A stretch of DNA of 64,000 nt. Source: Bugula neritina (taxonomy: Eukaryota; Animalia; Bryozoa). The stretch's first letter is position 1. Every line of letters begins with the position of its first letter. The stretch covers positions 24,337,319 through 24,401,318 of the forward strand of contig OZ037768.1 in the NCBI GenBank assembly GCA_964035545.1, written 5' to 3'. This document shows, piece by piece, positions 16,605-64,000 of the stretch. The notes below the pieces were generated by a model. The model was not told where the DNA came from and did no database searches. It saw only the letters and a list, made by a program, of their open reading frames with translations. A program made the translations under genes and the position numbers.

Positions 16605-19600
16605 TTACGTTCGAAATTCATGGATTTTTCTGTGACGGAGAAAAGTCCCACTCTGTCTGAATCTCTTGCCACATACATCACATTGATAGGGTTTCTCTCC
16701 AGTGTGAGTTCTCATGTGAGTGGATAACGTACATCTGTCTCGGAAATACTTCTTACAATATACGCAGACGTATAACTGTTTCTGCTGGTGATCCTGTGAC
16801 ATGAATAGAAAGAAAGGCAAGTTTATGCAAACTCACATCAGATATAGCAAGCAGATGTCTTTAACACAGTCTGTTCTCCAGCTTCACAAAGGAAACAGGA
16901 TATAAACTTTGAACACAAATTTAAGTAAAATTGCAAATGATCTGTATTGTAAATTCTTTCTACTAACTTCTATTGTATAAACTCTAGAGTTGATGTGGAA
17001 TCAAGTTTCTATTTATAAGAAAATAAAATGTATTGCAGGCTTGCGACTCACTATAACCGTCAAGAAATGTCTACTGGAACTACACACCCACTTTATATGC
17101 ATTAAACATCTTTTCAGTTTGAAAATTTCTTCACTTTGATAAAAATGAGAAGCTAGAGAGTAAAATCAGTAGCTATTAATAAAATGGCTCATTTTCATGA
17201 TTATAAAATTTTCACTTTTCTTGTAAAACGTTTCTTTTTAACTGGTAAACGAGTTTCCAGCTTGAGGATTGATAGAATTCAGTTTTATAACGTTTTGAAC
17301 ATAACATACTTTCACAAAAATTTAAAACTTTTTGGGCAAGCAATGAGAGATAAGTCATAAAGAAGCATGGAATTACCTGTAAATGTTGAAGATATTGACT
17401 GGGCGTGCTCAGTTGAGAGAAACATATGTCACAAGTATACACCATAGCGTCTTCATGTGTTGCCACGTGTGCTCGGTAATCTCGAACTTGTCTGTAGGAT
17501 TTACTGCATACCTGTAATGGTAGAATACTCTTACACCAATTGTTGTAAGTTTACAACTCTTAGCCAAGGGCCACACGGTGCGTATTTTCGCGTGCGAAAA
17601 TTGAAATCACAAGTAGCAAAGGTGTCCACTGTGCGCGTTGAGAAAACCTTCGCCCTTGTCGCTCTGCATTTTCAACGCAAGTGCGAATCGTCTCTGTCGT
17701 CGTCACCTAATTGGCTGGTAGCTATTCAGCGAGCCCAATTTCTTTATTTAGTGCTATATTCCAGTAAATTGCGTTTTATTGAAAGCGAGTGCGATTTAAA
17801 AATGAAAGCTTTATTTATCACGCATCACTGACGCTACAGTGGACACCTTTGCTACTCGTGATTTTAATTTTCGCATGCGAAAATACGCACAATGTGGCCC
17901 TAGGCTAAGTGCACATCTTTAATTAGAATATCAAGTTTACAACTCTTAGTGTATCTCCCTAATCGAGGCAATATCTTGCAGGTGAAAATATTGACTGGTT
18001 TGGAGACTAAATGTAAATTTTATTAAAGTAAAACAATTCTATTGTGCTAATTTATAAATAAACTTTGAGCAACCACTAAAATAGTTTTTATTTTGTAGCT
18101 TAGATTATTTTGTAAGTAACAAAAATTGACTTTATATATGTATATGTATACGTATACATATATGTATACATATATGTATACATATACGTATACGCATACA
18201 TATACGTATACGCACACCCACACACACGCACCCGCACGCGCGCGCACACACATATATATATAATAATGTAAGTTATTAGCTGACAGGTGTAGGGATTGGG
18301 ATATTTAGAACATAGCTTGAAGACGATGTTTTCACGAGTTAGATTTGGTGTCTTTATAATGTCCTCACTTTTGCCTGATGTTAAGGTTTTGATTTGCTCT
18401 TTGTTGGATCTAAAAATCAACACTTGGAGCATTATAGTTTCAATTACAGAAGCAATATTTATATGCATCAGCAATACTATTATAGTAACTTACAGAATTG
18501 CATTCTCAGCTGCTTTTCCTAGATTAGTTACTGTATAGTAAATATACTATATTATATAGTATATATATACTATATTATATTATATTATAGTATATATACT
18601 ATATTATATTATAGTATATATACTATATTATAATATAATTAAACAAGAATCTTTCAGTAATGCTGATGGTTCAGTCATGAATTCAATATTATTTCTCAAA
18701 GCCAATTTGCACAAAAATTGCAATATGTCAAAAATGTTTTCATATAGAAAAATTTTTAAAAGAAAGTTGGATTAGTTTTATGTGTTGAAGATGTTGAATG
18801 TATGTATCTACAATTTGCTTTACTTACATCTTAATAATGATTGGTTAATGAATATCTTACAAACACCTTTAAACTCATAACTTATAATAGGAATATACTA
18901 CAGATTAAAGTATGCAGTGTTACTGCTTGAAATTACCTCCCCACTACAAATGCCACCAATTTTATAATATTACAGGTTTCAAAACCTATCTTTACCGAAA
19001 CTCTCCATTTCTGTGAGACCCATGATGCGACTTATTCGAAAGATCATGTGACACGGCAGCAATAGGCATATCGCATTTTATATTCAAACATCTTCAGTCT
19101 AAAGACATTGATTATTGCTCTTTCCCCTACCTCCCATATTTTGTGTCATTAAAGAAATTAATAAATGTGTAATTTACATACAAGTCTGTATAAAAAAACA
19201 AAATTTTGCTATAAATACATTTTGCTATGCAAATGACAGTTTATTATTATCTAATATATCTTTGCAGTACACAAAGCATTCCGTCAGTTGGATTGATAAG
19301 TCTTTAGACTTACTATAATAGAAAAGTTCTACAATTCAAAAGCTTGAGCAAGACTTGTATCACTAATGATTTTGAAGATATTTTTATATACATTTCTGAT
19401 AAATTTTAGTGAAAAATACTTCAAATAGTCAATCAAGTTAAAATGTGCAATTACACCAAAATATTCCAAAAATAGGTATTGGTAGGGTAAACTGCTAAAG
19501 TATATTAGTATAATTGAACATAGTATGTGGTATCGTAAAATATGGCACCAACAGAATGGAGAAATAATCGTAAACGAGCAGTAAGTCATTTTAAGTTGGT

Positions 19601-22600
19601 GTTTTACTTGAGTCACCAGGCAGAAATCATTTTATAGGATGAGAAAAGAACCATTTATTTGAAAATATTTGTAGCATTAAAAGTCAGCTATAAATACCAA
19701 ACCTATTTGATAACTTGAAACAAGTTATCTACTTACTTTTCTACTTACTTCTCTACTTACTCCTCTACTTACTTCTCTACTTACTTCTATACTTACTTCT
19801 CTACTCACTTCTCTACTCACTTCTCTACTTACTTCTCTATTTACTTCTCTACTCACTTCTCTACTTACTTCTCTACTTACTTCTCTATTTACTTCTATAC
19901 TTACTCCTCTACTTACTCCTTTACTTACTTCTCTACTTGCTTCTCTACTCACTTCTCTACTTACTTCTCTACTCACTTCTCTACTTACTTCTCTACTTAC
20001 TTCTCTACTCACTTCTCTACTTACTTCTCTACTCACTTCTCTACTTACTTCTCTACTTACTTCTCTACTTACTTCTCTACTTACTTCTCTACTTACTTCT
20101 ATACTTAAGGACTTACCTCTCTACTCAGGGTGATAGTAGTATAGTGAGTGTTGTCATGACAGCAGCCAGTAAATGTCAATAACTAGGGTTATACTAGATT
20201 AAATGTCAACTTCTCAACCATGCAGGAGCTATGCTAGGATTTAACATCTAGTCAGCACGAAACTAAGTGATTTGTATTCTTTTTGAAAACTAATTGCTTG
20301 GAATTGAGAAATGCAGGTACTTTGAGTATATGCCAAGGTGACATACAGGAAGCATGAGTTACTTCTCTCTAACCCTGCATTCAACAGATAATTAGCTTCA
20401 TTCTCTACCCCCCTCCCCCACCCACCCCCTTATCCTGCTCCCCATGACAACGTTGCTTACAATATTTATGAAAATGTCTTATCAAACTGTGTGTTTTTGT
20501 TAACAAAAGGTACATTATATGTAAGATAATACTGAGATGACTGCAGAAGAAGAAATGAATGAAACTGAACAAAAGAAAACACATTGAATATTATGTTCCG
20601 CCAAAAATTACGAACCACACCATGCTAAACAGAAATAAACACAATTTTATAGTTTACAAGTGGTTAATTCAAACTTTCAATTTTCAATTTCTGTTTATTT
20701 ACTTTAAGTAGGCAGCTGATTTCATCCGGGCTTAGATGACGGCCACATTTACTCGTGCCTGGGAATTCATCTTCTAGACCGAAATACATCTCTTACAGTA
20801 ATCACTATTTTTAACATCAATTATTGCGTGCCATTTAGTTCTCACCAGGAATGCATCTATCAATCATTCACAGACCTGTGGTTGGCATAATTTAGGGAAG
20901 GAGAGCCAAGAACTACTGGATATAAACCACAAACAGATGGATGTCAGCTTATTCTAAGAAAAAGGGGAATCCCCTTGAAGTCACTAATGGTCAATAAATC
21001 AGGGCTATCCATCAAAATCCTGAAGGGTGTGTCGGGCTATGTTATTAATTATAAAGTTATGTATAATATTATGTATATTACATTCATTGCATTTCTCTGA
21101 ATTCGGTAAATTGTATTTATCCTTAGTACAAAGTTTTGCTAAAGGGTACATAATCTCAATTCCAGTGTAACAACAACATTCAGTATTTCCAACCATTATA
21201 GTGTTGAAGGTTTTTATATGCTGACTGGTAGAAGTAGTCAAGGGGGGGATAATATCTTCACATTTTTGTAAACCTTGTAACTAGTTAACCTTTCAATGGC
21301 TAAAGTAACGTGTAATAATAAGCTATATTAAAATAAGAAAGTATAGTAAGTAGAGTATTATAGCGTAGCGTAGCGTAGTATAGTATAGCATAGTATAGCA
21401 TAGCATAGTATAGTAAGTATAGCATAGCATAGTATATAGTAAGTATAGTATAGTAAGTACAGCATAGTATAGTATAGTAAGTATAGTAAGTCTGGTGTTA
21501 TAGTGAGGAATGTAAGGGAGATGCTAAAATTATTATGACCAATTCAAGTGCCTGGATGCAATGACTCATCTCTGGTGTGCGCAAGCAATGACATATTATA
21601 TAGAAAAGCGTGCAGTGTGGGTGCGTAGTAATAACACGTAACATACAAGCATCTTCTATTTATAAACCTGGTTTTAGTCTCACTTACATGTGTCCATCTT
21701 GCACGTTTTCCTGTAAAACAGAAATGAAACACCAGTTACCTGACTACCAGTTAACTGACTACCAGTTAACTGACTACCAGTTAACTGACTACCAGTTAAC
21801 TGACTACCAGTTAACTGACTACCAGTTACCTGACTACCAGTTAACTGACTACCGTGTTTCAGTACATACTTTGTAGCAGGAGCAAATTAAAATGGCTGAA
21901 CGCATTTGGTCAGCATAACTTCATTGTTTCTTGTAAATATAAGAGTTGAAATAAGTTGAAATGACTTGGAAAGGCTGGTGAGACATAATTTATTGGTTCC
22001 AGCTGATTGGCTGGTTCCAAATGAAGGCGATTTCAGTTTGTTATTTTGTTCTACTTTATTATTAGGTTTGCAAAATAACTATACATTTGCGAGTTTGACT
22101 GAAATGGGTGTCAAAACATTAGCATAGCTAAAACTATGACTAAAACAATACGCCAGTCTATTTATACTCAGATCTCTTGCTTTTACAAGCCCTGTGAGCT
22201 ACAAACAACTAAAATTAAATGACAGCATATGTTTGGTCAATTATAATCAGGCAACTATATTCAAAAGCTTAAAATAGCAGAAATTTTATTTAAAACTATG
22301 AGTACCTGTTCGTTAGAGTTTAGAAAGTGAGTCACAGCGTCTGGGGTGGGATTAGAGTTTAGGAAGGCTTTGTCTCCTGTAAAATATTTAAACAGTTGAG
22401 ACTCTCAATTCACCCATGCAGCTGTGTTGTAGTGAATAATAATTTAAGTTAATAAGCAATGCCTCCCATAATACACACTGACACACGGAAACTGTGTATG
22501 CCATAATACACACTGACACATGGAAACTGTATATCTCATAATACACAGACACATGCAAACTGTGTATCTCATAGTACACACTGACACATGGAAACTGTGT

Positions 22601-25041
22601 ATCTCATAGTGCACACTGACACATGGAAACTGTATATCTCATAATACACACTATTTTCAATCATTTAAGTTAATGCAGCCTTCTGAGATCACTTGAGATA
22701 TGATAGACAATAATATCACAAGTAATTTTGCATTTCACTGGTTAGTAGAACTTTGATATTGTTGCAATGAGCCTTCAATTAAAACAGCTTTTTGATTGGC
22801 TAAAAATGGTCTTGAAATAAATTACTGTAAAGTAGTCATTCCACGGGTTTTGTATTAAATCTTTATTCTAGACAAGTTTGCTTTTAAAATATTCACATGG
22901 AAGATAGTAGGTAGTAAAAAAGGACATGCCACATTGACTAGGATGCTCTGCTGCCAATATGGTGGCTATAGTTCACTGCAGAAATAATATTCTGCAGTAG
23001 ATAATCTGTAATAACTATGAAACATACCACTTACTCTACTCAAATAACCCTTAGCGCAACTTGTCTTTCTAAAACCTTGAATCAAAATCTCTAATATATT
23101 CACAACTCTACCTTTGATGGGTTTAATAAATTCCCCTAGTGGTGAGAGAGTTAGGTGAATAAATCTTCTTAAAGGATTGCTCTATCTTGTCTAATAAATG
23201 GCCATTTAGGTCAAACACACATAATATTGTGATTTTCTAAGCATGAATTGACAAAAAGCATTTGACCAAAGGTAGAAAAAGTTAGTTGAAGTTGAGGGTG
23301 TAGATTGGTAACAGCCAAAACGCCGATTTTGAAATGAGCTGGGAAATGTGACGTAACAGCGCCAGCATTCCTGCTGGTCACGTGACTATACAAATGAATA
23401 ACTATAGAAATATGACTGTGAGATGTGATCTTTCAGCTCGTAATTTGTATATTTATAGAAGTGCAAATGTGAATTATCTCAATCTATAGTTTTTTGACAT
23501 GTTAAATAACATGTATGTGATAACATTAGGCCATATTTTGCTTGTAAACATAGAAAAAAGCATTGCAAAAACATGCATTCTTTAGGATGAATGCCTGCGA
23601 TCGATCTAAACTAGGTCAGATTGTGCAATATTACGGGCACACCAAAGCTGACCTATATAGCGCACTGTAACTGCTTGAGCGTTATTGGTTGATGTTGCGC
23701 TCAGCAACCTTGCATACTTGCACGTGCAGCATAGTTACTGGCGTTCACACGTCACGTATTAGGCTATTCTTTTTCATGGCTGAAAATTTTACCTCCCTCA
23801 AAATTGGAATTTTGAAAAGCTGTTTTCTAGGCATATATCCTTTTGCAAAGTCACAATTGTTTGCATACACATTAGATTATAGCTCATAATTATAATGTGA
23901 TTGTAATAAACTAAGATAGAGCAATCCTTTAAATGTTCTATTTGAAGAATGACTTTCAATTAACAGTCATGAATCACCGTTGGTATATAACTTATGACTA
24001 GTAGCTGTTAGAAAGTGGCCAAGCTCATTGGGGCATACCAGCAAAATTTTGTAGATCGAGATTGATTAAAAAAGTGTAGTACTTTAGCACAGATGGCTGG
24101 CTTTGCCAATTATAGCCTTTTAATTTGGTCTTGTAATGCTAACAGCAAAAAAGTGGTTTTCCAACATCAGACAAGTGCCATATGACAACACAGGATGCTG
24201 AACGCAGGCGCACAATTGCAAGTTCTAACAGTTTTGTAGGAATTTTCTAACTGCAGGGGAGTCACATTTCACACCTAAATGTCAAACCAAAAAGCTGTCA
24301 ACTACATCTAAGTGAATTAAGTCTAGACCTGTACACCAAACCGCAACATCGTGACTTCAACATATAAATTAATTTCTATTCTCAACACTTTAACGTAAGT
24401 CTTAACATACAGTTTCAGTTTGTTTTCTCTTCACGAGATAAAGTCTATCATTCTGGTAACTATATACTTAAGTTTATATACTTTAAATTATTCCCAGCAC
24501 AACACTCCACATACCTTTAGACTTGATAGAGTTGCAATCATATAATGAGAATTCCCTTGGGTCTTCTAATTGCCAATATGTGTTGTAAGATGATTTAGTA
24601 TCACTGTAAGTTAGTGTAGTATCACTGTAAGATGATGCACTATCACTATAAGTTGGTGTAGCTTCACTGTAAGTTAGTTTAGTATTACTATAACTTGGTG
24701 TAGTATCACTGTGAGTTAGTTTAGTATTACTATAACTTGGTGTAGTATCACTGTGAGTTAGTGTTTCACCATAAAATGTTCTGTTCTTATTTAGATGAGT
24801 TCTCAAATCAAGTGCTTGTAAGTTGTCTTCCCACTTTGGATAGTGTGAGTACGCTGGATAGTCAACTCTGAGGCCATCTCCTTCTACAAACAGTGTTGAG
24901 ATGTTCAGAATAGAGTACTGAGTCTAATTGAACGCCAAGTAGACACACCAAACAGTACTCACTTTTCATACCTTGAAGATGGCTGCCCTTGACTGATAGG
25001 TCTAAAGGTAGAGCGTATTCCTCACATTGCCTACTCATCAT
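16605..25041 (-). CDS. PLDLS-motif 4xC2H2 zinc-finger gene, copy 1 (exons 24972-25041, 24515-24883, 22306-22376, defective ~18280-18409, 17377-17511, 16605-16793)
   Basis: MMSRQCEEYALPLDLSVKGSHLQ|EGDG..WEDNLQALDLRTH..(TPSYSDT-type repeats)..SK|GDKAFLNSNPTPDAVTHFLNSNEQ|..YTCQ|VCSKSYRQVRDYRAHVATH..YLQHLQ|DHQQKQLYVCVYC..HTGEKPYQC..HRKIHEFRT*. The exon-4 donor reads CT instead of GT. Confidence 0.8.
17563..17905. mobile_element. PIF/Harbinger-type MITE in ZF copy 1
   Basis: ~70-bp TIRs (GCCAAGGGCCACAC..GGTGTCCACTGT / ACAGTGGACACC..GTGGCCCTAGGC), TTA/TAA flanks; empty site in copy 4 at ~61790. Confidence 0.85.
19725..20120. repeat. 12-bp minisatellite (CTACTTACTTCT)n
   Basis: Visible tandem; source of the LLYL/SREV ORFs. 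Confidence 0.95.
20964..20974. promoter_or_regulatory. Palindromic NF-kappaB/Rel-type site GGGGAATCCCC in intron 3 of ZF copy 1
   Basis: Exact match to the p50-type palindromic kappaB consensus; homologous sites at 63643 (perfect) and 36612 (one mismatch). Confidence 0.45.
21730..21855. repeat. 15-bp tandem repeat (CCAGTTAACTGACTA x8)
   Basis: Visible tandem. Confidence 0.9.
22465..22652. repeat. ~35-bp tandem repeat (ACACTGACACATGGAAACTGTGTATCTCATA..), with ~3 copies also at 55330-55430
   Basis: Visible tandem at homologous intron-2 positions of ZF copies 1 and 3. Confidence 0.8.
23173..23928. mobile_element. Kolobok-like non-autonomous DNA transposon
   Basis: TTAA|AGGATTGCTCTATCTT ... 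AAGATAGAGCAATCCT|TTAA: 16-bp perfect TIR starting AG with a TTAA TSD; absent from the other ZF copies. Confidence 0.8.
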
Positions 25042-26229: not shown

Positions 26230-26344
26230 TTAAATGCATTTTCTTTCTATGAATTCCCTGTTGAGTCTAACAAAGCCACTGACCTTTACATCTCTAGTGC
26301 TTTAGGTCTTGATTGGATGATGTTTTTGACTCACACAAGAATTG

Positions 26345-29075: not shown

Positions 29076-29099
29076 TGTAGTCTGCAATCAGGTGAGTAG

Positions 29100-29500
29100 T
29101 TATAGAGTTAGTATATCAGTTAGAGTTGGTAGAGTAGTTAGAGTTGGTAGAGTAGTTAGAGTTGGTAGAGTAGTTAGAGTTGGTATAGAGTAGTTACAGT
29201 TGGTAGAGTAGTTAGAGTTGGTAGAGTAGAGTTGGTACAGAGTAGTTAGAGTTGGTAGAGTAGTTAGAGTTGGTATAGAATAGTTAAAGTTGGTAGAGTA
29301 GTTAGAGTTGGTAGAGTAGTTAGAGTTGGTAGAGTAGTTAGAGTTGGTAGAGTAGTTAGAGTTGGTAGAGTAGTTAGAGTTGGTAGAGTAGTTAGAGTTG
29401 GTAGAGTAGTTAGAGTTGGTAGAGTAGTTAGAGTTGGTAGAGTAGTTAGAGTTGGTAGAGTAGTTAGAGTTGGTAGAGTAGTTAGAGTTGGTAGAGTAGT
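29100..29500. repeat. 18-bp minisatellite (TAGAGTAGTTAGAGTTGG)n
   Basis: Visible tandem; source of the NYSTNS/TTLPTL ORFs. Confidence 0.95.
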
Positions 29501-29599: not shown

Positions 29600-30321
<722 letters not shown>

Positions 30322-33569: not shown

Positions 33570-36500
33570 ATGATGAGTCAGCAATGGTATGGATATGATT
33601 TACCATTAGATTTATCAGTCAAGGTCAAGTATGTTCAAGGTATCTGATATAAATATATTTAAAATGCTAAATTTTGTTTGCCTGGCAGGCCTTAGGTTCA
33701 ACATTTCAATATGAAGACTGAACATTTTCTGTAGAAGTAGATCATGGCTGCAAACGCAATTCTCCAGTTCATGATCGAAAATCGGAATGGGAAGACAATT
33801 TACAAGCACTCGATTTAAGAACTCACCGAAATAAAGAAACCACAACTATGCACAGTGACACTACACCAACTTATAGTGATACTACACCAACTTACAACAC
33901 ACATTGGCAGTTCGAAGATCTAAGAGACTTCTCATTTTATGATTATAATGTCAACATGTCTAAAGGTATGTGGATTGTTGTATTGAGATTAATTCAAACC
34001 ATATCACATAATTTAGTAATAACAAAAAATTTAGAATTTATCTGGTCAAGAAAAAACAAACTGAAACTATATGTTACGACTTATATTAGAGTGTTAAAGA
34101 TGGATACCAAATCATACCTTTATAAAAATGCAGAACATCCAGTAATAGTTTATTGTTGGTGATGGTATGCACCAGTCATTATAGTTAAAGAGATTTTATT
34201 AATCTCTTTAACATAAAGAAACATTATTTCAATGTTCTAGAAGTGCATTATAGTGAGTTACACTGACACTGACAATTGTGAAAACATTGATAATTATTAA
34301 AACCCAGTCGCATGTATGCATTTAGAGTTTCAACTGTTAAATTCTTTTATAGAAGACAATATCCTCCTGGACTCTATTCCCACTCCAGACGTTGTGACTC
34401 TCTTTCTGGGCTCTAACAAACAGGTATTCAGATTTTGGAAAATAAGTTATACTTCTTTCTACTTTAGAATAGTTTAATGATTAACCCAACGTTTGTTAAC
34501 ATATAATTTAGTTGTTTGCAGCTAACATGACGTTTAAGATTATAAAATCTTTGTATATAATAACTTGCTTATTGCTTTACTCATAGTTTTAGCTATGCTA
34601 CTGTTTTGACACTCATTTCAGTCAAACTTACAGATTTAGTTATTTTGCAAACCTAATAATACAGCAGATCCAGACCCCAAAATGGTAATCTTCCATCCAT
34701 CAGCCAAAACCGCTAAATCATGTTTACCAATATGCAAATAATATGCCATTAGCCATTTTGAACTGTGTATGAGTATTATTAATCATGCATAATGTGCACC
34801 TGTGAGAGAGACTGTACTAACACCAGAGTTATAAATAGCATCATCATGTCTTTAAAGTATAGCAATTGCTACACTTTCACTTGATACAATAGTTACTTAC
34901 TTACTATACTTACTCTACTCTACTATACTATACTATACTATACTATATACTATACTATATACTCTACTATACTATACTATACTTACTATAATACTATATG
35001 CTATACTATATACTCTACTATACTATACTATATACTATACTATATACTCTACTATACTATACTTACTATAATACTATATACTATACTATATACTCTACTA
35101 TATACTCTACTATATACTATACTATACTATATACTATACTATATACTCTACTATACTATACTATACTTACTATAATACTATATGCTATACTATATACTCT
35201 ACTATATACTATACTATACTATATACTCTACTATACTATACTATACTATAATACTATATACTATACTATATACTATACTATATACTATACTATACTATAC
35301 TATACTTACTATAATACTATATACTATACTATATACTCTACTATATACTATACTATACTATATACTATACTATATACTCTACTCTACTATACTATACTTA
35401 CTATAATACTATATACTATACTATATACTCTACTATACTATACTTACTATAATACTATATACTATACTATATACTCTACTATATACTATACTATACTATA
35501 TACTATACTATATACTCTACTATATACTATACTATACTATATACTATACTATACTATATACTATACTATATACTCTACTATACTATACTATACTTACTAT
35601 AATACTATATGCTATACTATATACTCTACTATATACTATACTATACTATATACTATACTATATACTCTACTCTACTATACTATACTTACTATAATACTAT
35701 ATACTATACTATATACTCTACTATACTATACTTACTATAATACTATATACTATACTATATACTCTACTATATACTATACTATACTATATACTATACTATA
35801 TACTCTACTCTACTATACTATACTTACTATAATACTATATACTATACTATATACTCTACTATATACTATACTATACTATATACTATACTATATACTATAC
35901 TATATACTTATTATAATACTATACTATATACTATAGTTACTACTCATTATATGTACTATACTATACGTGCTATACTATATCTGTTCAAAGTTGATTTGGT
36001 GCAAATTTCTCAGAAAGTTAAAGATATTTGCTCACTTGACTATATTTCTACCATGTGGTCAGCATATACAAACCTTCACACTAATAGTTAAAAATACTAA
36101 ATGCTGTTTTACATAATAATAATAATTGAGATTTTTATGCCCTTCTAGCAAAATTTTGTACTAAGCCAAGTACAAACTGCTAAGTTCTGGGAAATGTAGT
36201 GCATGATAGAGCACTGATTAATGAAGATTAACATTGATTTATAAGCATTTAGGGCAGGGCTGTCCAACAGGCGGCCCCAGGGCCGCATGCGGCCCCCAAG
36301 CCTACATTTATGTGGCCCTCAAAGGCATAACCAATAAAATTATTTTGCACACATATATGAATTGGAGTAGAAAAACTACCTTTGAAATGTCTTATTAATA
36401 TGCATGCTAAACACATGCAGCCTGCAGTAATTATTGGTACTTCATTGTGAATGATTCATAAGAATTTGGGATAAAGTAATTTGAAAATTGCTGAATATGC

Positions 36501-41332: not shown

Positions 41333-44300
41333 AATTCTGAGTATGATAAACTGAATTAAGCACAAATTAAGCCCTGTTGAGTATATTCATTGCTAGCAGC
41401 ATATCCAAGCAGAATGTCCAAACTGCATAGCCTCATATTATTATGGCCCAAATCATATCATATGGATGAATTGTTTGCTGCTTTTGTTTTTAATTTGGTT
41501 TATGGAGTGCAAGTCTCTTAGCTAGTTTATGGAGTGCAAGTCTCTTAGCTAGTTTCGAGGTATTCGTTGTAAAAGGAGATGACTTACATCTGCTGACGTA
41601 CAGCAGTTACTGAACATTACACTGCAAGAAGGCGCGAAATCCTACGGCAGCCATATTGAATGAAGACTAAAAGGAAATTATTTCACGGAATCTAATTGTG
41701 ACAAAACCACCACCAGTATGGAACGCAATTTAAACCTTTTAGTAAATTATCAGAAGAAATTAAATTTAAGAAACATCCAAGATGGTTAACTAATTGTAAA
41801 ATATCAAACACAGCTAAAAAAAGTTGTTTAAATCAGAAATAATAAATTGCTTGTCATTTAGCTAGCGCACTTCTGAGTTTCAAGGTCTAATTTCTAATTG
41901 AGCTTTTCACTTTCTGTGTTTATATCGCTAATTAGAACATGCAGTTTTATCAATAGTATAGTATAGTGAGCATCGTGTTAAGTGTGAATTAATATAGTAT
42001 ATAACAACACATATTAACATGCAACATTTATGGTATTCACTTGCATGATGCATGTTATGTGTTGTTGCTATATCCCCACTTAACTATACTGTATATCAAG
42101 TACCTGAATACATATCTTGGCTATAGCTATAACTTAGCTAAGCCACACTTGGCTGATCAATGGAGGACAATTCTGTCCAATCATTCATTTTCTATTTCAA
42201 AAACTAGCTCAAAGAAAAACTAGAAACAAATTTGTAAATTAAGTTTTTATCCAAAAACTTATATTATCAGCTTGATAAATTTAAAATAAGCCTGTTTTTA
42301 GCACAAAGTCAATATTGTCATCTAAAACTATCATCAGTCAGCTATTACTAGCAGTGTAGGTGAGAGGTAAGTTGAGGGAAAGCCAAGTCTAAAGACAAAT
42401 CACATGTTTACAATCAACTTATTTCCCATAAAAATGTTTGCACTTTGCAGCATTGCCAACTTTTTGTTTGTCAATTGGTGTCATTGCCAGAGCTGTGAAA
42501 GCTTAACCACGCAAAATATTCCATGTGGCAGAAGATAATGAAAACATTGCGTCATAGTAACCTTGTGAATATTGGTTTTATGAACATTTGACATGTCACC
42601 TTTGTTAAACCTATCTTTTCTCAGTAGTTATTCATGAGGTATTTTATCAAGATAAATGCCAATTTAATAAGATGTTTTTGCTAACAATCTCTGTCTAGAC
42701 TCTAGAATCTAGCAGATGGAGTCAAATACCACAAAGAGTTTAAACTAAATATTTTATAAATTGGTATAGTAGTGGCATAGCTATCAGTATAACACCAAAT
42801 CTAAAAACCTTTACAAGTTAATGTTATTTAATTGGTATTTGAGAAAACAATGGCAGACTTGTGGAGAAACCTTTGAAGTAAAATAAATCCAAGAATAGAT
42901 AAAAATGCTATAATCAAGATACTAAATATGGCCAAGTCAACTGTTTATATATTATAGTAAAAGTAATTACATCAACTTTCATGATTTCTAATTAACTAAT
43001 AAGTAGCTTCGTAACTCGGATTTTCTCTAAGAAATGAAAATTGCTACAAAATCATGCAAATTACCCTTGGAGTTATACTCTCTTTTATTTTCTGTTTCAA
43101 CAACACTGCAATATTATGCTTTTGATTTATAAAATCTATAAAGAAGTTTATGTTTAACCTGAGTTCAGATTGAAAGAGCTGATTAATTTATTTTTAGCTA
43201 TAAATAATTTTTTTTCTTTGTAAAAATATAATCATAGTCATGTATGATTTAAATCTAGTACAGCATTATATAATTAAATTAAATATAAGTCGTTCACCAG
43301 GTGTACATGTTGAATATATAACAAGAATGAAGCCATTACCATAAAAGCCCAATTATATACAGACTAACCATGCGTAATGCATAACAAGATTGCCCTGTAA
43401 CACTAGAGTATATGATATTGATATTAAATGCAAAATGCAACCAGATAATATTTTCATCACCGGTAATGAGAATGTTTGTCATCTGTGTGAAGTATTAAAT
43501 TCAAAGCTTATGGATTTTTCTGTGACGGAGAAAAGTCCCACTCTGTCTGAATCTCTTGCCACAAATATCACATTGATAGGGTTTCTCTCCAGTGTGAGTT
43601 CTCATGTGAGTGGATAACGTACATCTGTCTCGGAAATACTTCTTACAGTATATGCAGACGTATAACTCCTTTTGCTGGTGACCCTGTTATATGAACAGAT
43701 ATAACTGCAAGTTTATTCACATTAAATATAACAAGCGGATTTATACCAACACAATATGTTCTCCAGGTTAACGAAGGAAACGGGTTATAAAGTTTACAGG
43801 TATATGATGAGTATTGTAAAGTGTTGTAAAGTCTTTCTGGTAATTTTTATGGTAGAAGCATAAGGGCCCAAAGTTAATGTTAACTTTTTATTTAATGGAA
43901 GGGAAAATGTATTTCAAAGTTACAACTTACTATAAAATCCCTAAGAAGTTGCTTTAATAAAAGATATACTTATGAAACTAGTAAAAACCTTATAAAATAG
44001 AACAAAGGGTATATTATGTTATTAGAGTTATGCTTGCTTATCCATGCAGAACGTATTGGAGCTACTATAGTTCACCCCCTCCCCACCACTTGCCTGCATC
44101 AGATGTGCTTTCAGTTTTAGTTCTAAAATTTATTTGTTTTGTAAAATGTGAGAGGCTAGAAGAAGTTAGTTAAAACAAGTAGCCATAGAACCTAACAGTT
44201 GGTAAACTGCATGGTTGACTTTATTCCATACAAATATTAAATTCATTGTCAACATTGAATAGCCTAGTTGGCAGTCTTTTTTCAGCTACCAATAGTCTGG

Positions 44301-45234
44301 TAAAACAGTCCCTTTTTAATTATTAATAGTCTAGATTTTAGTTAAATCTCAGTAGTCATAAAAATTAGTTTTATTCTAAATATCAATTTTTTTTGCAAAA
44401 AGCTTAAAGATATTTTTTAAACATGCAGTGAGTCATCAACCATAAGAGAGTATGGAATTACTTGTAAATGTTGAAGATATTGACTGGGCGTGCTCAGTTG
44501 AGAGAAACATATGTCACACGCGTACATCATAGCGTCTTCATGTGTCGCCACGTGTGCTCGGTAATCTCGAACTTGTCTGTAGGATTTACTGCATACCTGC
44601 AATGTTATAATAATCTTACACTAACTGCTGTAAGTATCTAACAGAGAGCAACTTTAATTGGCTGAAAGTAGCTGTGAGGATTGTCTTTTTAACTGAATAT
44701 TACAAGAGTTATAGATTAATATAAGTCAATACCTGGCAGGTGTAGGGACAAGTAGACTCAGAATATGGCTTCAAGATGATGGTTTGTTGAGTTGGAAGTT
44801 GTTGCGTTATACTTTCACCTTCACCTTTGGCTTGACTTTGACTTCCACCTTTGGCCGAAGCCAGAGCTTTGTCCTGCACCTCATTTGGCTGCTGTAGCGA
44901 AGAGTGATTTGAAATGTTTGACAACTAATATGTTGCACATGTAATTAATAAAAAAACACAGCATATTCTAGTTAGGTTATTTTTAGATCAAGAGCTACAA
45001 TTAGACATGCATCTTTAAGTAAGGCTGATAATTAAAATAAATCAAAACTTCAAAATCAAAAATTCAGATTATCCGAGCAATTAACACTAAAGTTCTACCA
45101 AATTTGTTATACTTCATATTCATGAAAAATTTTAGTGAAAAGAAGTTGGAGTTATTTTATAAGTTTGATAAGCTAAACACACATATTTGTAGGTTGTTTT
45201 ACATAGACAAGTACTGATTGGTTAAACTAGAATC

Positions 45235-51147: not shown

Positions 51148-51222
51148 AGAGAGCTGTGTGCTGTAACGACTACTGCCAGTAACTGGAATATAATGTGGTT
51201 CATCTCTATAAAAGGGATGGTA

Positions 51223-53766: not shown

Positions 53767-54365
53767 GTCATGTAGAGCAGATGACTTAAACATTGAGCTT
53801 TACTCAAGTCTGCAGCAAGAGATCTGTTGTGATTATAACAAATAGTAGAGTTGTTTATCTGCCAGCCTAAGAGACCTTTGTGCTGTAATGACTACTGCCA
53901 GTAACAACAAGTATGTGGTACCATTTGGTTCCCACTAATCTAAACATGTGCTGCATCAATCATTTGCAGTTGACATGTTCCAGAAAAAAAACAAAGAACC
54001 AGCACCTGCTGCAAGTGACCACAAACTAATGAATCCTTGACACACTTCACTTATGCAGTATTAAAATATTATTGTATATGTTAGTTTTCATTTGCATACT
54101 GTTTCAAGGTTGGATGCCCAAATAATTTTGTTTTATAATGAGTTTTGTGCGAGTATGTGCTGAAGTGATTTGGGATTTCTGATTGCCTGAAAATAAATTT
54201 TTCTTGGGATTTCTGATCGACTGAAAATAAAATTTTCGGTCAGCTTTGACTTTACGGCTACTATAAAACTTATACTAATTATAGCTAACTTTCATTGCAT
54301 GCTATTTTTAGCTGCTGCACTGCACAGCATAATCACTGATATGGCTTCAAAGTTTAAACTTTTAA

Positions 54366-54454
<89 letters not shown>

Positions 54455-54525
54455 CGTAGCGTGAGTTTTTAAAAAACAGCAGATGAAAAAGTGCTCAAAT
54501 TATTATGTGTATAATAATGAGCAAT

Positions 54526-54824
<299 letters not shown>

Positions 54825-55664
54825 AAATAACTAATTTAGCAGTTTGGCTGAAATGAGTGTCAAAACATTAGCATATCTCAGCGTCATGACTAAAACAATA
54901 AGTCAGTTATTTTATAAACATATTAGTTTATATTTTAGAAGTCCTGCTAACTGCAAGCAATTAAACTTAAATGGAAAATAACTTCTGAATTGGAGGACTA
55001 TTCTAAACTAAAATAAATATCAAAACATATTTCCCAAAACACGAATACCTGTTGGTTAGGAATTAGAGAGTGAGTCACAACCTCTTGAAAGGGACAAGAG
55101 TCCAGGAGGTTATTGGCCTTGTCTCCTGTAAAATAGTTTAAATGCTGAGACTCTCAACGCACCAATACAGCTGTGTTTTAGTCATTGTCAACTTCAGGTG
55201 GTGTGAAAAAATTTCACAGGGTAATTTATTTGTATTTACATTTCTATTCACTAATCTAATTTTACTCAAGCATAACACTCTAAATTCATGCATAAAAGTT
55301 ATTATGCTAGAATTAGTTAATAATTGCAGTGTATCTCATAGTACACACTGACACATGGAAACTGTATGACTCATGGTACACACTGACACATGGAAACACT
55401 ATATCTCCTAGTACACACTGACACATGAAATGTGCTTGATATCTATTTTCAACACTTTAACATAAGTTGTAACATGCAGTTTCAGTTTGCTTTCTCTTTG
55501 CCAGGTAAAGTTTGCATTTTAGTTATTACTAACTTATATGTAAGTTTACTGACAGTGTGATATGATTTGAATTATTCCCAGCACAAAGGTCTACGTACCT
55601 TTAGACTTAATAATGCTGTAATCATATAATGAGAATTCTCTTGAATCTTGTTACTGCAAAAATG

Positions 55665-56310
55665 TGTTGTAGCATCACTGTAAGTTAGTATAGTATTATT
55701 GTAAGTTGGTGTAGTATCACTGTGAGTTAGTTTAGTGTCACTATAAGTTGGTGTAGTGTCACTGTGAGTTGGTGTAGTGTCACTGTGAGTTAGTGTAGTA
55801 TCACTGTAAGTTAGTATAGTATTATTGTAAGTTGGTGTAGTATCACTGTAAGTTGGTGTAGTATCACTGTGAGTTGGTATAGCATCACTATAAGTTGGTA
55901 TAGCATCACTGTAAGTTAGTTTAGTATCACTATAAGTTAGTATAGTGTCACTATAAGTTGGTATAGTATCACTGTGAGTTAGTGTAGTAACACTGTAAGT
56001 TAGTTTAGTATCACTGTGAGTTAGTGTAGTATCACTATAAGTTGGTGTAGTGTCACTGTGAGTTAGTTTAGTATCACTGTTAGTTAGTGTAGTGTCACTG
56101 TGAGTTGGTGTAGTATCACTGTAAGTTAGTATAGTATCACTGTAAGTTAGTGTAGTAACACTGTAAGTTGGTGTAGTAACACTGTAAGTTGGTGTATTAA
56201 CACTGTAACTTGGCATAGTATCAGTGTAAGTTGGTGTGCTGGTACTGTGAGTTAGTCTAGTGTTACCATAAGTTAGTATATTACCACTGTGAGTTGGTGT
56301 AGTATCAATG
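55665..56310. repeat. 21-bp minisatellite (about 30 units) inside exon 2 of ZF copy 3; about 8 units at 24585-24770 and about 2 at 33850-33897
   Basis: Unit GTGTAGTATCACTGTAAGTTG, encoding TPTYSDT on the minus strand. Confidence 0.92.
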
Positions 56311-57446
56311 CAAATAGTCCTACTTTTCTTATTTCGGTGAATTCTTAAATCAAGTGCTTATAAATTGTCTTCACATTCCGATTGGCACTCATAAACTGGA
56401 AAATTGCATTTGCTGCCATGATGATGATCTACCTCTACAGAAGATGTTCAGTCTTTATTTTACAAGTGCCTGCAAAGCAAATGCACAAAACAGTACCTAG
56501 TTTAAATATATTTATATCAGATACCTTGAATGTAGTTGACTTTGACTGATAAATTTAATGGTAAATTATATCCATCCCATTGCTGACTCATCCTACCTGC
56601 TATTGTAGAAGGCTGATTTCACTAATAGTGCACATGCCCAGTCACTGCTCATAAATTTACCCTGCTGTACTGATTTCACCTTTAAAAAGAAGCTGGCTTT
56701 TAGTAGGCGTGTCCTCAGCCGTATAATCCTATTACCTATTGGTCAACAGGCAACGTACAACTTGATGGATTTAACTTATATCCAGCCTTCTAATAATCAG
56801 AGTCTGTCTATTAGACAATCAATCGGTGGTTATGAACTGAGTTGGTCACATTGAAAAGTCTGTTAACTGGTCAGACTTCATAACCATATTCAGTAAAGTG
56901 ATGAATTATTACCCTGTATAGTTTTTCAGTAACAATTGCATTCAGTTTAAATTACTGCATTTAAAAGACTTTTATAATGAGTTTCAAAATATTTGTTCTG
57001 CAGCTCATAATTTTAAATTTAATGTTTATATATTCATAAAACCATGATCAATGCATGAAGGGTTCACGTACTAGTAGTAGACAAATTAACTAATAGTTAC
57101 TAGATATTACTTCCTTTGCTTCAAAGAAGAGGTCGTCTGCCTTCTGTCTGTAGAAACAAGAAATGTTATAGAGTCAGGATGACAACTTAAAATTTTTAAA
57201 GCTGTTTTTTGTGTGTTCATTATTCTAAAATCAGTTTAAAAAGTAAAGGCTGCAGTAATTGATTTCTCTGTGCATGAAACTATATAAATTTTATCTGTTT
57301 TCTTTCAAGTACAAGTTTTATACTGGTATTAGAATAGTTTGATGCGCATGTTTTGGTAAGAACTGGTGGTGTTCTAGAATCATGGTAATATTTACATGAA
57401 ACAATTAAGTAAACTCAGACTCGCATCTCACCACAACTTAAAGCAA

Positions 57447-60304: not shown

Positions 60305-62859
60305 TTATGTCCGAAATTCATGGATTTTTCTGTGACGGAGAAAAGTCCCACTCTGTCTGAATTTCTTGCCACAAACATCACATTGATAAGGTTTCTCTCC
60401 AGTGTGAGTTCTCATGTGAGTGGATAACGTACATCTGTCCCGGAAATACTTCTTACAGTATACGCAGACGTATAACTGTTTTTGCTGGTGACCCTGTTAT
60501 ATGAACAGATATATATTAATGCAATATTGTAGTGGCTGTGGGAAGTATACCATTCAGTACCCCTACCGAAATAATTGTATTATATTGTTGACAGATAAGT
60601 TCAAGGGGCTACAACTCCATAGCGATGCCGATGGAACCCTATACTAACCAATCAGGACCAACCTCTTGGATATAAGTGGCGTCCAGCCTCAGTCTGAGGA
60701 TAACTAGTGACTAACTAAGTACTAGTGTGATTATTCCTAAGTTGTACTCTTTTTGCTTTGTTCTATATGACTCTGTTTGTATATAATTAGAATCTTAATA
60801 CAATTACTTCTCTGAAACATCAAACTAGTCAACTAGTTGGGTTCTTTCTATAACCTCATAGTTTACATGCAGTAATTATTGGTACATATAATAACAGCCC
60901 ACTTAGTAGTGCATAAAACTACAACAATATAATAATAAACAGAATGATGGCACAGTCTGTTTCCAGGTTTAAAATAGAACTATTATACATGATTAGGTAC
61001 AATGTAAAGTCTTTCTAGTAACTTCTATAGGGTGTAAGCAGAAAACACTAAAGTTGGTGTGGAATTATTTTTTATTTAAAGGCAAGAAAAATAGATTTAG
61101 AAGTTTATACAACTAATTAAACAGTTGAGGTATTATTAGATCAATAGAAATATACTCAGAGAACTAGTAGAGACCTTATCTAATGGTTTATTGGGAGAAC
61201 GACCTGTATATATTATATCATATGAGTTATGCACCCTTTCCTCTCCCCTCCCTACTACTTGCCTGCATCAGCTTTAAAATATTTTATTCTCAAAAATGGG
61301 AGGGGCCAGAACAAGTTAGTTAAAAGTTAAAACAAGTAGCTACAAATCTTATCGTTTGATAGGCCTGTACTTTATTCTGTACTTATAATAAATTCCTTAT
61401 TATCATTGAATAGTCTGGTTGACAGTCTCTTTCTAACTATAGTAATAGTCTAGTCAACAGTCTCTTTCAATTAGTAATAGTTCAGGAAACTGTAACACAA
61501 ATCAGTTTTATGGCATTTTAAAAAACAAAGGTTTTCTACAAAAAGCCTAAAGATATTTTACAAACACGCAGTGAGTTATCAATGGTAAAAGAGTATGGAA
61601 TTACTTGTAGATGTTGAAGATATTGACTGGGCGTGCTCAGTTGAGAGAAACATATGTCACACGTGTATATCTTAGCGTCTTCATGTGTCGCCACGTGTGC
61701 TCGGTAATCTCGAACTTGTCTGTAGGATTTACTGCATACCTACAATGTTAGAATACTCTCACACTAACCGCTGTAAGTTTACAATTCTTGGTGCACGTCT
61801 CTAATTAGAATATTATATATGCAGGTAAAAATATTGACTGGTTTCATATCTCAGCTATTTGTTGCGACCTGTTAATGCTAATTAGTCTACAGATATTATT
61901 CTTATATAAATGCTGCATCAAAGGAAGGTATTCTACTTATTTATTAGAAATATATGAAAGTCTAATTCTTTGATTAAAAGTAAGACTGTATAAATAGCAT
62001 ATGATACACTAAACTTACACTAGCACCACAACACATACTAAACACAACATGACACAACTGCCATATTTTAGGACATACACAGCTTGGCAGGTTGTTGAAC
62101 TTATAGAAATATTTTGACTGTTTTCACTGTAAAATTTATTTGCTCTATACTAATGATAGATTTCTAAAAGCCTGGTTTAGATATACTAGGTATACTATAG
62201 ATATACTATAGATATACTATAGATATACTATAGATATACTATAAATATACTAGATAATACTAGATATACTAGATATTTGCTGAATTACCATTAAAAATCT
62301 GTTGATGTTTTCTTGTCAATTTCAAATTTTGAGTAATAGTAATTAATTTATTGGGAAACCATGTGTTGTTTTGAAAGCAATAGGTAGAAAAAAGGTCAAT
62401 AAAGGTCAAATGCAAATGTGTATTATATGCGAGTGGTTATAGGGGGTCATTAAATAGCTTGTTAGCTGCATAGGGAAAAATGATGGAATTTAACTGAAAT
62501 ATGAGTTAAATATGCTCTTCTACTGTCAGGAATTGAGGACCTAGCTAGTGAATACTAGGAGCACTGTATTTGGTTATGTAGCATAGAACCAAGCTCTTTT
62601 CAGCTGAAAGTAGCCTGGAGGGTGATGGAAGACCAGAAACAAACTGGATAATATAAGAGTAGACTAATATATAAGTAATTACCTGACAGGTGTAGGGATT
62701 CGTAGATTGAGAACATGCCTGGAATATGATGGTTTGATGAGTCGGATTTTGTTGTGTGTCTGTCGGTCTTTCACCTTCACTTTTGGCTTGACCTTCACCT
62801 TTGGCTTGACCTTCACCTTTAGCTGAAGTCAGAGTTCTTTCCTGCCCCTTATTTTGCTG
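60305..62859 (-). CDS. PLDLS-family zinc-finger gene, copy 4, 3' exons (62683-62859, 61605-61739, 60305-60493); 5' exons lie beyond the window
   Basis: QQNKGQERTLTSAKGEGQ..PYTCQ|VCSKSY..HEDAKIYTCDIC..HLQ|GHQQKQLYVC..HRKIHEFRT*; canonical splice sites; intron-3 homology continues to 64000. Confidence 0.85.
60528..60926. mobile_element. Solo LTR in the last intron of ZF copy 4
   Basis: TG...CA ends, perfect ATAT TSD, TATA-like GATATAAG at ~60670; absent from the same intron in copies 1-3. Confidence 0.75.
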
Positions 62860-63642: not shown

Positions 63643-63653
63643 GGGGAATCCCC
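63643..63653. promoter_or_regulatory. Palindromic kappaB-type site in intron 3 of ZF copy 4
   Basis: GGGGAATCCCC, homologous to 20964. Confidence 0.45.
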
Positions 63654-64000
63654 TACATGCATATAAATCAATGCTAACCATCAACATTCTTGATAGTGCA
63701 AACTTAGTGCTCAATTACCATAACATGCCCTACATGCATTTCAACTAACTTGGCAGTTCCACGAAAAGGTACATAATCTCAATTCTTATGTAACAACAAC
63801 ATTCAGTATTTTTAACTAATAGTGTGAAAGATTACATAAACTGACTGGTAGAAGTGGAGTCAAAGGGGAAATATCTTTCTTCAACTTTCTAGAAACTTAG
63901 TAACCAAGCAACCCTTCAACAGCTAAACTCACTAAAGTGAAATGCCAAATGGCCAAACCAAGTACCTGGATGCCCAGTGACTCATCTCTAATCAGCTGAT

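What the first reader, a model, noticed from the sequence alone, without database searches (positions are those of the whole stretch)
16605..64000. Hidden tandem family of small CtBP-recruiting (PLDLS) four-finger C2H2 repressors
Seen: hand-splicing joins fragments missed by the ORF track into a 6-exon gene present four times. Exon 1 encodes PLDLSVK (copies 1 and 2, different synonymous codons) or PLNLSVK (copy 3). Exon 2 encodes WEDNLQALDLRTH, where all four copy1/copy2 differences are synonymous. Known: PxDLS and ALDLx-type motifs bind the co-repressor CtBP. Inference: this is a lineage-specific, expanding ZNF repressor family that uses paired CtBP motifs instead of KRAB/ZAD/BTB. It sits in a TE-dense birth-and-death cluster and is a candidate invertebrate analogue of KRAB-ZFP clusters. 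I do not recognise an orthologue.
Basis: partly seen in the sequence, partly recalled or inferred. Interest (0 to 1): 0.8.

Follow-up and report, generated by a model that had tools for sequence, protein, structure and literature searches.

The report
Bryozoan four-finger zinc-finger family with CtBP motif
A small, bryozoan-only family of five zinc-finger genes, four of them clustered here but only two of those intact, carries a conserved docking motif for the co-repressor CtBP, so the proteins are probably ordinary DNA-binding repressors rather than a KRAB-like defence system against transposons.

Summary
The window carries four paralogous copies of a six-exon gene: A (-), B (+), C (-) and D (-), with D's first three exons just past the window end. 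PLDLSVK and DNLQALDLR are present, and the A/B differences inside them are all synonymous.

- **Copy state:** C is a pseudogene and A has a mutated exon-4 donor plus a phase clash. Only B and D are intact in the cluster.
- **Family size:** the whole 216-Mb genome holds five loci. The fifth, on contig C7, is the orthologue of a Bugula neritina hypothetical protein (KAF6025478.1, 270 aa).
- **Range:** three Watersipora subatra proteins share the unusual fingers, two intron positions and PLDLS plus PLDL[RT] motifs. No relative was found outside bryozoans.
- **Selection:** the fingers are under purifying selection, and DNA-contact residues are almost invariant among the cluster copies. This is the opposite of KRAB-ZFP behaviour.

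CtBP is encoded in this genome with a near-invariant PxDLS-binding region, so recruitment is plausible but untested. No RNA data exist for this species. The scan earlier noted a different PLDLS-bearing zinc-finger array elsewhere in this genome (s1-445869).

The parts
33570..33639 (+). Copy B exon 1 (start codon; PLDLSVK at 33603-33623; ends in phase 1)
33735..33965 (+). Copy B exon 2 (DNLQALDLR at 33794-33820; two heptad units; YWQFED..F.FYDY block)
   Evidence: acceptor position confirmed by P0001
34353..34423 (+). Copy B exon 3 (71 nt, phase 1 to 0)
   Evidence: homologous to exon 3 of P0001
37472..37597 (+). Copy B exon 4 (linker; ends with first Cys of finger 1, ..YTCQ)
38387..38521 (+). 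Copy B exon 5 (rest of finger 1, most of finger 2)
39254..39442 (+). Copy B exon 6 (end of finger 2, fingers 3 and 4, stop)
24972..25041 (-). Copy A exon 1 (PLDLSVK at 24988-25008)
24515..24883 (-). Copy A exon 2 (DNLQALDLR at 24801-24827; about 9 heptad units, minisatellite 24594-24762)
22306..22376 (-). Copy A exon 3 (ends in phase 0)
18280..18409 (-). Copy A exon 4: acceptor is phase 2 (clashes with exon 3) and the donor dinucleotide at 18278-18279 reads CT, not GT, so the copy is probably defective
17377..17511 (-). Copy A exon 5
16605..16793 (-). Copy A exon 6 with stop
56525..56591 (-). Copy C exon 1 (PLNLSVK at 56541-56561; first ATG lost)
55599..56434 (-). Copy C exon 2, broken: TAA at 56358-56360 inside the DNLQALDLR block, a frame shift near its end, and about 30 heptad units (55668-56307)
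55049..55125 (-). Copy C exon 3
44733..44888 (-). Copy C exon 4
44462..44596 (-). Copy C exon 5
43501..43683 (-). Copy C exon 6 with stop
62683..62856 (-). Copy D exon 4 (with three 18-nt KGEGQA-type units)
61605..61739 (-). Copy D exon 5
60305..60493 (-). Copy D exon 6 with stop. D's exons 1-3 lie beyond the window, at extended coordinates 67038-67107, 66309-66944 and 65768-65838 (in L014)

Best explanation
This is a small, bryozoan-restricted family of six-exon genes. Each encodes a short protein (270-424 aa) with a disordered N-terminal half and four C-terminal C2H2 fingers.

The fingers most likely bind one shared or very similar DNA motif. The N-terminus carries an exact P-x-D-L-S-x-K motif (PLDLSVK), the docking peptide for the co-repressor CtBP. 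The proteins therefore most likely act as sequence-specific transcriptional repressors that bring CtBP, and its histone-modifying partners, to target genes.

A second conserved block, DNLQALDLR, descends from a PLDL[RT] motif. It may be a weaker second CtBP contact or may bind another partner.

The cluster in the window arose by old local duplications and inversions of a gene whose intact, more conserved paralogue sits on another contig. Two cluster copies (B, D) remain intact and two (A, C) are decaying. The paralogues differ mainly in the disordered region, above all in the length of an in-frame 21-nt (seven-residue, SDTTPTY-like) coding minisatellite.

- **Shown here:** gene structure, copy number, defects, selection, motif conservation, presence of CtBP.
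- **Inferred:** CtBP binding, repression, expression.
For: **Gene models and defects:**

**Family size:** only five loci in the genome. Exon 5 gives five hits at 76-100% identity. For exon 6, the next-best hit after the five copies drops from 108 to 59 bits.

**Orthologue:** the fifth copy matches B. neritina KAF6025478.1 in all six exons. Exons are 90-97% identical and introns about 85%.

**Second genus:** Watersipora proteins P0007, P0018 and P0161 share the finger signature and carry PLDLS; P0007 and P0018 also carry PLDL[RT]. P0018's gene has the same intron positions inside fingers 1 and 2.

**Motif conservation:** in exon 1 of A, B, D and E, the 8 residues LPLDLSVK are invariant, against 4 of the 15 other positions. 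That gives a hypergeometric p of about 0.001 (my count). The differences inside the motifs are synonymous.

**Selection:** finger omega is 0.07-0.23 and N-terminal omega 0.29-0.56.

**Disorder:** an AlphaFold model of the orthologue has residues 1-156 at pLDDT below 50 and four confident beta-beta-alpha fingers.

**CtBP:** the gene is present, and its PxDLS-binding N-terminal exon is 38/40 identical to mammalian CtBP1.

**Literature:** the PXDLS consensus often has Lys two residues after Ser (PMC1693901). The P-DLS-K motif of Snail binds CtBP (PMC8339073). The N-terminal CtBP domain binds PxDLS, and V72R/A58E mutations abolish binding (PMC1592084).
Against: - There is no transcript evidence for this species.
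- Exon 3/4 borders in A-D are inferred from conserved AG/GT sites and frame only.
- CtBP binding is not tested.
- The second motif lacks both the Pro and the Ser of the consensus. Double Pro+Asp-to-Ala substitution abolished binding in ZNF366 (PMC1693901).
- PLDLS could serve another partner.
- Within the cluster, the finger exons have much lower dS (0.09-0.23) than the N-terminal exons (0.34-0.63). Gene conversion may therefore inflate the apparent constraint.
Confidence: 0.6

Rival explanations
1. The genes are real DNA-binding factors, but the conserved PLDLSVK and DNLQALDLR blocks dock a partner other than CtBP, or only the first one binds CtBP. The family would then not be a paired-motif CtBP repressor.
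For: ALDLR departs from the consensus at two positions (PMC1693901). A third conserved acidic-aromatic block (YWQFED..EFSFYDY) shows that the N-terminus carries other functional peptides. Only sequence evidence is available.
Against: PLDLSVK is an exact match to the P-x-DLS-x-K motif that binds CtBP in Snail, and to the PXDLS-plus-Lys form seen in ZNF366 (PMC8339073, PMC1693901). It is kept as PLDLS in three Watersipora relatives. CtBP's binding region is nearly invariant in this genome. HIC1 binds through a degenerate GLDLSKK, so Pro is not absolute (reference list of PMC1592084).
Confidence: 0.2
2. One reading: this is a fast-evolving, expanding KRAB-ZFP-like family that targets transposable elements.
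For: The paralogues are clustered and have a co-repressor motif. Pseudogenes are present. Copia-like and gag-like LTR remnants sit in intron 3 of copy C. The family is lineage-restricted.
Against: Only five loci exist genome-wide. Of 16 DNA-contact positions, 15 are identical among A-D, and only finger 2 differs from the C7 copy. The fingers are under strong purifying selection. The finger signature is conserved between Bugula and Watersipora. Much larger zinc-finger clusters lie elsewhere in the genome.
Confidence: 0.05
3. Only the C7 copy is a working gene. All four cluster copies are unexpressed relics, with B and D still open by chance or through gene conversion from one another.
For: Two of four copies are demonstrably broken. 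Low dS in the finger exons suggests gene conversion. No relative of the cluster copies appeared among B. neritina proteins in the word search. There are no RNA data.
Against: B and D keep all ten splice sites and open frames of 273 and 424 codons, despite N-terminal dS of 0.38 between them. For B against D, omega is 0.51 in the N-terminus and 0.23 in the fingers, and the pseudogene C shows higher finger omega (0.42-0.51). Both motifs are intact in B and D.
Confidence: 0.12

Closest known systems
Bugula neritina KAF6025478.1 (hypothetical protein EB796_016202, 270 aa), plus Watersipora subatra XP_067944596.1 and XP_067940998.1 and a third Watersipora protein (P0161, auto-named 'zinc finger protein 271-like isoform X1')
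   Same: They share the four-finger domain with the unusual ..KQ[VA]RDYRAHVA.. first finger. The Watersipora gene examined (P0018) has the same intron positions inside fingers 1 and 2. All have a disordered N-terminus with PLDLS, and most have a second (P/A)LDL[RT] block. The B. neritina protein is the orthologue of the fifth copy on contig C7.
   Different: All are uncharacterised and carry automatic names ('ZSCAN4-like', 'che-1-like', 'ZNF271-like') that do not reflect orthology. The four cluster copies are paralogues of these, about 50-75% identical in the exons to the C7 copy, with expanded heptad repeats.
Drosophila short-range repressors Snail and Krüppel (C2H2 fingers plus a CtBP-binding P-x-DLS-x-K/H motif)
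   Same: C2H2 DNA-binding domain at the C-terminus. An exact P-x-D-L-S-x-K peptide in a disordered region. Expected CtBP-dependent repression.
   Different: There is no specific finger similarity. Matches to PDB and Atlas entries are generic. There is no SNAG domain. Orthology is not supported.
Vertebrate CtBP-recruiting zinc-finger proteins (ZNF366, ZNF516, HIC1; also ZEB1/2 and ZNF217, cited from general knowledge)
   Same: C2H2 proteins that use one or more PXDLS-type peptides, often two, instead of KRAB, SCAN or BTB domains, or alongside them. HIC1 shows that a degenerate first position (GLDLSKK) can still bind.
   Different: Those are large, single-copy, conserved vertebrate genes. These are small (270-424 aa) and bryozoan-only, with the motifs N-terminal to the fingers.
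KRAB-ZFP clusters of tetrapods
   Same: Clustered lineage-restricted C2H2 paralogues with a co-repressor docking element. Pseudogenes and TE insertions occur in the cluster.
   Different: There are five loci rather than hundreds. DNA-contact residues are conserved rather than diversified. The fingers are under purifying selection. The family predates the Bugula-Watersipora split.

Membership tests
C2H2 zinc-finger proteins (Pfam PF00096 / PF13465) | C-x2-C-x12-H-x3-H units scoring above the Pfam gathering threshold | tested here: met
   Exon 6 scores PF00096 at 42.4 bits (cut-off 25.2) and PF13465 at 42.2 (cut-off 40). Exon 5 scores PF00096 at 26.1 bits. The model of P0001 shows four beta-beta-alpha units.
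CtBP-recruiting PxDLS repressors (functional class) | A P-x-D-L-S peptide, often with Lys two residues after Ser | tested here: met
   PLDLSVK is present in A, B, D, the C7 copy and P0001. The definition comes from PMC1693901 and PMC8339073.
CtBP-recruiting PxDLS repressors (functional class) | Motif conserved among orthologues and paralogues while the flanks drift | tested here: met
   8/8 motif positions are invariant against 4/15 flanking positions in exon 1. Only synonymous changes occur inside it. PLDLS is present in three Watersipora proteins.
CtBP-recruiting PxDLS repressors (functional class) | Motif lies in an accessible, disordered segment | tested here: met
   In the AlphaFold model of P0001, residues 1-156 have pLDDT below 50 and no secondary structure. 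This is a prediction only.
CtBP-recruiting PxDLS repressors (functional class) | The host encodes CtBP with an intact PxDLS-binding cleft | tested here: met
   The CtBP exons lie at C2:9.936-9.939 Mb. Matches to CtBP1/2 chains have E of 2e-25 to 3e-20. The N-terminal exon is 38/40 identical, and the Val and Ala hit by the V72R and A58E cleft mutations are kept (PMC1592084).
CtBP-recruiting PxDLS repressors (functional class) | Physical binding to CtBP and CtBP-dependent repression | not testable with these tools
   Needs two-hybrid, pull-down and reporter assays.
KRAB-ZFP-like arms-race clusters | Large, recently expanding copy number | tested here: not met
   Five loci in 216 Mb, two of them broken. 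Divergence within the cluster is older than the split from B. neritina.
KRAB-ZFP-like arms-race clusters | Diversification of DNA-contact residues (-1, 2, 3, 6) between paralogues | tested here: not met
   15 of 16 contact positions are identical among A-D. Finger omega is 0.07-0.23.
KRAB-ZFP-like arms-race clusters | Binding to transposable elements | not testable with these tools
   Needs DAP-seq or ChIP.
Known conserved bilaterian C2H2 factor (1:1 orthology) | A specific relative outside bryozoans that scores above generic fingers | tested here: not met
   A profile of exon 5 was run against 1.84 billion representatives. Family members score 52-108 bits per domain, and the next-best domain scores 30.7 bits. 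Named members are all bryozoan. PDB and Atlas matches are generic.

The most novel reading that the evidence does not exclude
Bryozoans evolved their own class of small CtBP-tethering four-finger repressors. In this class the paralogues keep the same DNA specificity but differ in a coding minisatellite. The minisatellite sets the length of a Ser/Thr/Tyr/Pro heptad array, from 2 to about 26 units, loosely reminiscent of the RNA polymerase II CTD (my recollection). That array would sit between the co-repressor motifs and the fingers as a tunable spacer or condensate-forming module that modulates repression strength. With the separate PLDLS-bearing two-finger array reported elsewhere in this genome, this would make the CtBP motif the preferred repressor module of lineage-specific bryozoan zinc-finger genes.
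Probability: 0.15. Interest if true: 0.55.

Novelty: new member of a known kind. Interest (0 to 1): 0.3.

Why it matters
The result gives a checked gene model and family history for an uncharacterised, bryozoan-restricted transcription-factor family. It identifies a testable repression mechanism, CtBP docking through PLDLSVK, in a phylum with almost no functional transcription-factor data. It also shows that a co-repressor motif plus clustering does not by itself make a KRAB-like arms-race system. Here the fingers are conserved and the family is small and old. The heptad coding minisatellite that varies more than ten-fold between paralogues is a modest curiosity worth a look.

Tried and rejected
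- **RNA evidence.** The look-up of sequencing runs returned one run that holds 82% of the words across exons and introns, so it looks like DNA.
- **Read laying.** Nothing was laid.
- **First exon-2 and exon-3 borders.** My first exon-2 acceptor (33768) and 35-nt exon 3 were wrong. The B. neritina protein showed the upstream acceptors. The corrected model gives 273 aa.
- **Whole-protein word search with P0001.** It was swamped by generic multi-finger proteins. Only the three Watersipora proteins stood out, by identity of 59-66%.
- **P0151.** This 658-aa cluster-mate of fragment P0093 is a transketolase, so it is a clustering artefact and was ignored.
- **Watersipora neighbourhood.** No paralogue lies within 10 kb of P0018.
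- **Joined spliced proteins.** All searches went exon by exon by reference. Full-length comparisons used database proteins only.


Full report
**What is in the window**

The window is AT-rich animal DNA (34% G+C). It corresponds to contig C4:24,337,319-24,401,318 of a 216-Mb genome.

A six-frame motif scan finds PLDLS or PLNLS, WEDN..ALDL, and pairs of C2H2 fingers at four places. Self-BLAST shows four copies of the same set of conserved blocks, with E down to 1e-180. I call them:
- A, minus strand, 16605-25041
- B, plus strand, 33570-39442
- C, minus strand, 43501-56591
- D, minus strand, from 60305 to beyond the window end

A and B are head to head, B and C tail to tail, and C and D in tandem.

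**Gene model**

Alignments of the copies give conserved AG/GT borders for six exons.

My first guesses for the exon-2 acceptor and for exon 3 were too short. A profile of exon 5, searched against 1.84 billion representative proteins, returned a 270-aa protein, P0001. It is Bugula neritina KAF6025478.1, 'hypothetical protein'.

P0001 aligns exon by exon, at 76-95% identity, to a fifth copy on contig C7. That alignment fixes the upstream acceptors. With them:
- Copy B sums to 822 nt, or 273 aa.
- The C7 copy (E) sums to 813 nt, or 270 aa.
- D sums to 1275 nt, or 424 aa. Its exons 1-3 lie 1.8-3.1 kb past the window end and were fetched as L014.

All three have open frames and canonical splice sites.

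The conserved exon-1 donor is caag|gtat, five codons after PLDLSVK.

Every search used single exons by reference, and full-length comparisons used database proteins.

**Defects**

Copy C is a pseudogene. It shows:
- a TAA in place of Gln inside the DNLQALDLR block (56358-56360);
- a frame shift near the end of exon 2, with further stops in the expected frame;
- loss of the first ATG;
- PLNLS instead of PLDLS.

Copy A keeps open exons. However, its exon-4 donor reads CT instead of GT (18278-18279). Its only good exon-4 acceptor is phase 2, as in E, while its exon 3 ends in phase 0. It is probably not able to make the four-finger protein.

So two of the four cluster copies are intact.

**Family size and range**

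Whole-genome six-frame searches find exactly five loci.
- Exon 5 gives five hits at 76-100% identity.
- Exon 2 gives the same five places.
- Exon 6 gives five hits at 85-100% identity (108-140 bits), then a drop to generic fingers at 59 bits or less.

Among the best 150 proteins of the representative search and 120 of the word search, only six carry the finger-1 signature (RDYRAH). They are P0001 (Bugula neritina), three Watersipora subatra RefSeq proteins, and two unnamed environmental fragments.

Scored per domain, these reach 52-108 bits. The next-best protein reaches 30.7 bits. PDB and ESM-Atlas comparisons give only generic zinc-finger matches.

The one Watersipora gene examined (P0018) has the same intron positions inside finger 1 (between the two Cys) and finger 2 (before the first His-x3-His residue).

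The family is therefore old within cheilostome bryozoans and was not detected outside them.

**The motifs**

Exon 1 of A, B, D and E has LPLDLSVK invariant (8/8). Only 4 of the other 15 positions are invariant. The hypergeometric p is about 0.001 (my count).

A and B differ at three nucleotides inside PLDLSVK and at four inside WEDNLQALDLRTH. All of these are synonymous.

PLDLSVK fits the published forms of the CtBP-binding peptide:
- PXDLS, often with Lys two residues after Ser (PMC1693901);

The Watersipora proteins have PLDLSK, PLDLSRK or PLDLSL. At the position of ALDLR, two of them have PLDLRI or PLDLTI. The second block is therefore a derived form of a second PLDL motif.

Whether ALDLR still binds CtBP is open. 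HIC1 binds through GLDLSKK (Deltour et al. 2002, cited in PMC1592084). On the other hand, double Pro+Asp-to-Ala substitution abolished binding in ZNF366 (PMC1693901).

An AlphaFold model of P0001 puts residues 1-156 at pLDDT below 50 with no secondary structure. It shows four confident beta-beta-alpha fingers. This is the usual setting for a short linear motif.

**CtBP**

The genome encodes CtBP at C2:9.936-9.939 Mb. Three exons match CtBP1/2 chains at E of 2e-25 to 3e-20, while other dehydrogenases match at 1e-5 or worse.

The N-terminal exon is 38/40 identical to mammalian CtBP1. The Val and Ala whose mutation (V72R, A58E in CtBP2) abolishes PxDLS binding are kept (PMC1592084).

**Selection and history**

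Nei-Gojobori counts were summed per exon.

| Comparison | Region | Value |
|---|---|---|
| A, B, D against E and each other | fingers | omega 0.07-0.23 |
| pseudogene C against B, D | fingers | omega 0.42-0.51 |
| all pairs except those within the cluster involving C | N-terminal exons | omega 0.29-0.56 |
| within the cluster | N-terminal exons | dS 0.34-0.63 |
| within the cluster | finger exons | dS 0.09-0.23 |
| cluster copies against E | both | dS 0.8-1.5 |

The low finger dS within the cluster suggests gene conversion or extra constraint on those exons.

Introns of E and its B. neritina orthologue are about 85% identical. The cluster duplications are therefore older than that species split. 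The cluster is not a recent expansion.

The DNA-contact positions (-1, 2, 3, 6) of the four fingers are identical among A-D, except finger 3 position 6 (Ile in B, Thr elsewhere). E differs only in finger 2.

This is the opposite of the KRAB-ZFP pattern. Far larger zinc-finger clusters lie elsewhere in this genome (C8:8.45-8.58 Mb, C5:14.56-14.72 Mb).

**What varies**

The paralogues differ mainly in the disordered part. An in-frame 21-nt minisatellite in exon 2 encodes SDTTPTY-like heptads. It has:
- one or two units in E;
- two in B;
- about nine in A;
- about 26 in D;
- about 30 in C.

Exon 4 carries an 18-nt KGEGQA-type repeat in C and D. A third conserved block near the end of exon 2 (YWQFED..EFSFYDY) has no assigned function.

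**Surroundings**

Intron 3 of C (10 kb) holds LTR-element remnants.
- One is copia-type: gag, pre-integrase, integrase core and an SH3-like domain, all fragmented, between 241-nt direct repeats at 45235-45475 and 47970-48213.
- The other is a gag-like CCHC open frame (51848-52870) between direct repeats.

Between A and B, on the minus strand, lies an unrelated peritrophin/mucin-like gene. It has two CBM_14 domains, a weak PAN match and Thr-rich repeats.

The rest of the non-coding DNA is rich in minisatellites.

**Limits**

- No RNA data exist for this species. The only run holding the locus behaves as DNA.
Those places were not sent to any search afterwards.
- Expression, splicing of exons 3-4 in A-D, CtBP binding and repression are all inferred.

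**Verdict**

The most likely function is a CtBP-recruiting sequence-specific repressor, and the family is bryozoan-restricted and uncharacterised.

The 'expanding KRAB-like TE-defence cluster' reading is not supported. It is a new member of a known kind and of modest interest. The scan had already reported a different PLDLS-bearing two-finger array elsewhere in this genome (s1-445869). I did not examine it.

Noticed in passing
window 26300-29800, minus strand: An unrelated gene sits between copies A and B. It has two chitin-binding peritrophin-A (CBM_14) domains (27626-27859 at E 4e-10; 26424-26861 weaker), a weak PAN-domain match (28785-29087) and long Thr/Pro-rich repeats encoded by the (TGG)n, 18-nt and 24-nt minisatellites. 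It looks like a mucin- or peritrophin-like secreted protein.
   Followed up: partly
window 45235-48213 and 51222-53763, plus strand (inside intron 3 of copy C): Two degraded LTR-retrotransposon remnants. One is copia-type (gag, pre-integrase, integrase core, SH3-like) between 241-nt direct repeats that are 92% alike. The other is a 341-codon gag-like CCHC open frame between direct repeats that are 89% alike. They are described only.
   Followed up: partly
window 38281-38347 (B), 17935-18001 (A); C7 copy just upstream of exon 5: A 67-nt block in intron 4, 40 nt upstream of exon 5 in B, is 91% identical between A and B although the surrounding intron has diverged. In A it lies about 420 nt further from the exon. 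A similar reading (..PVNIFTC..) is seen in the C7 copy. It could be a splicing element or an alternative exon, and is unexplained.
   Followed up: no
window 38387-38521 and paralogous exon 5 copies: Exon 5 is almost identical at the nucleotide level among A-D, with changes confined to three or four linker codons, while the N-terminal exons have dS of 0.34-0.63. This points to gene conversion or nucleotide-level constraint.
   Followed up: partly
window 3246-3776, minus strand: An open frame with a weak match to the C-terminal part of the ion-transport domain (PF00520, E 2e-5). It is probably an exon of an ion-channel gene upstream of the cluster.
   Followed up: no
G000 C8:8.45-8.58 Mb and C5:14.56-14.72 Mb: Dozens of generic C2H2 hits are packed in two regions. 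These are the large zinc-finger clusters of this genome and are unrelated to the five-member family studied here.
   Followed up: no
   Followed up: no
L026 (B. neritina VXIV02002455.1) versus C7:2.035-2.045 Mb: Introns of the orthologous gene are only about 85% identical to the public B. neritina assembly GCA_010799875.2. The scanned genome is therefore a different species or sibling type from that assembly.
   Followed up: partly
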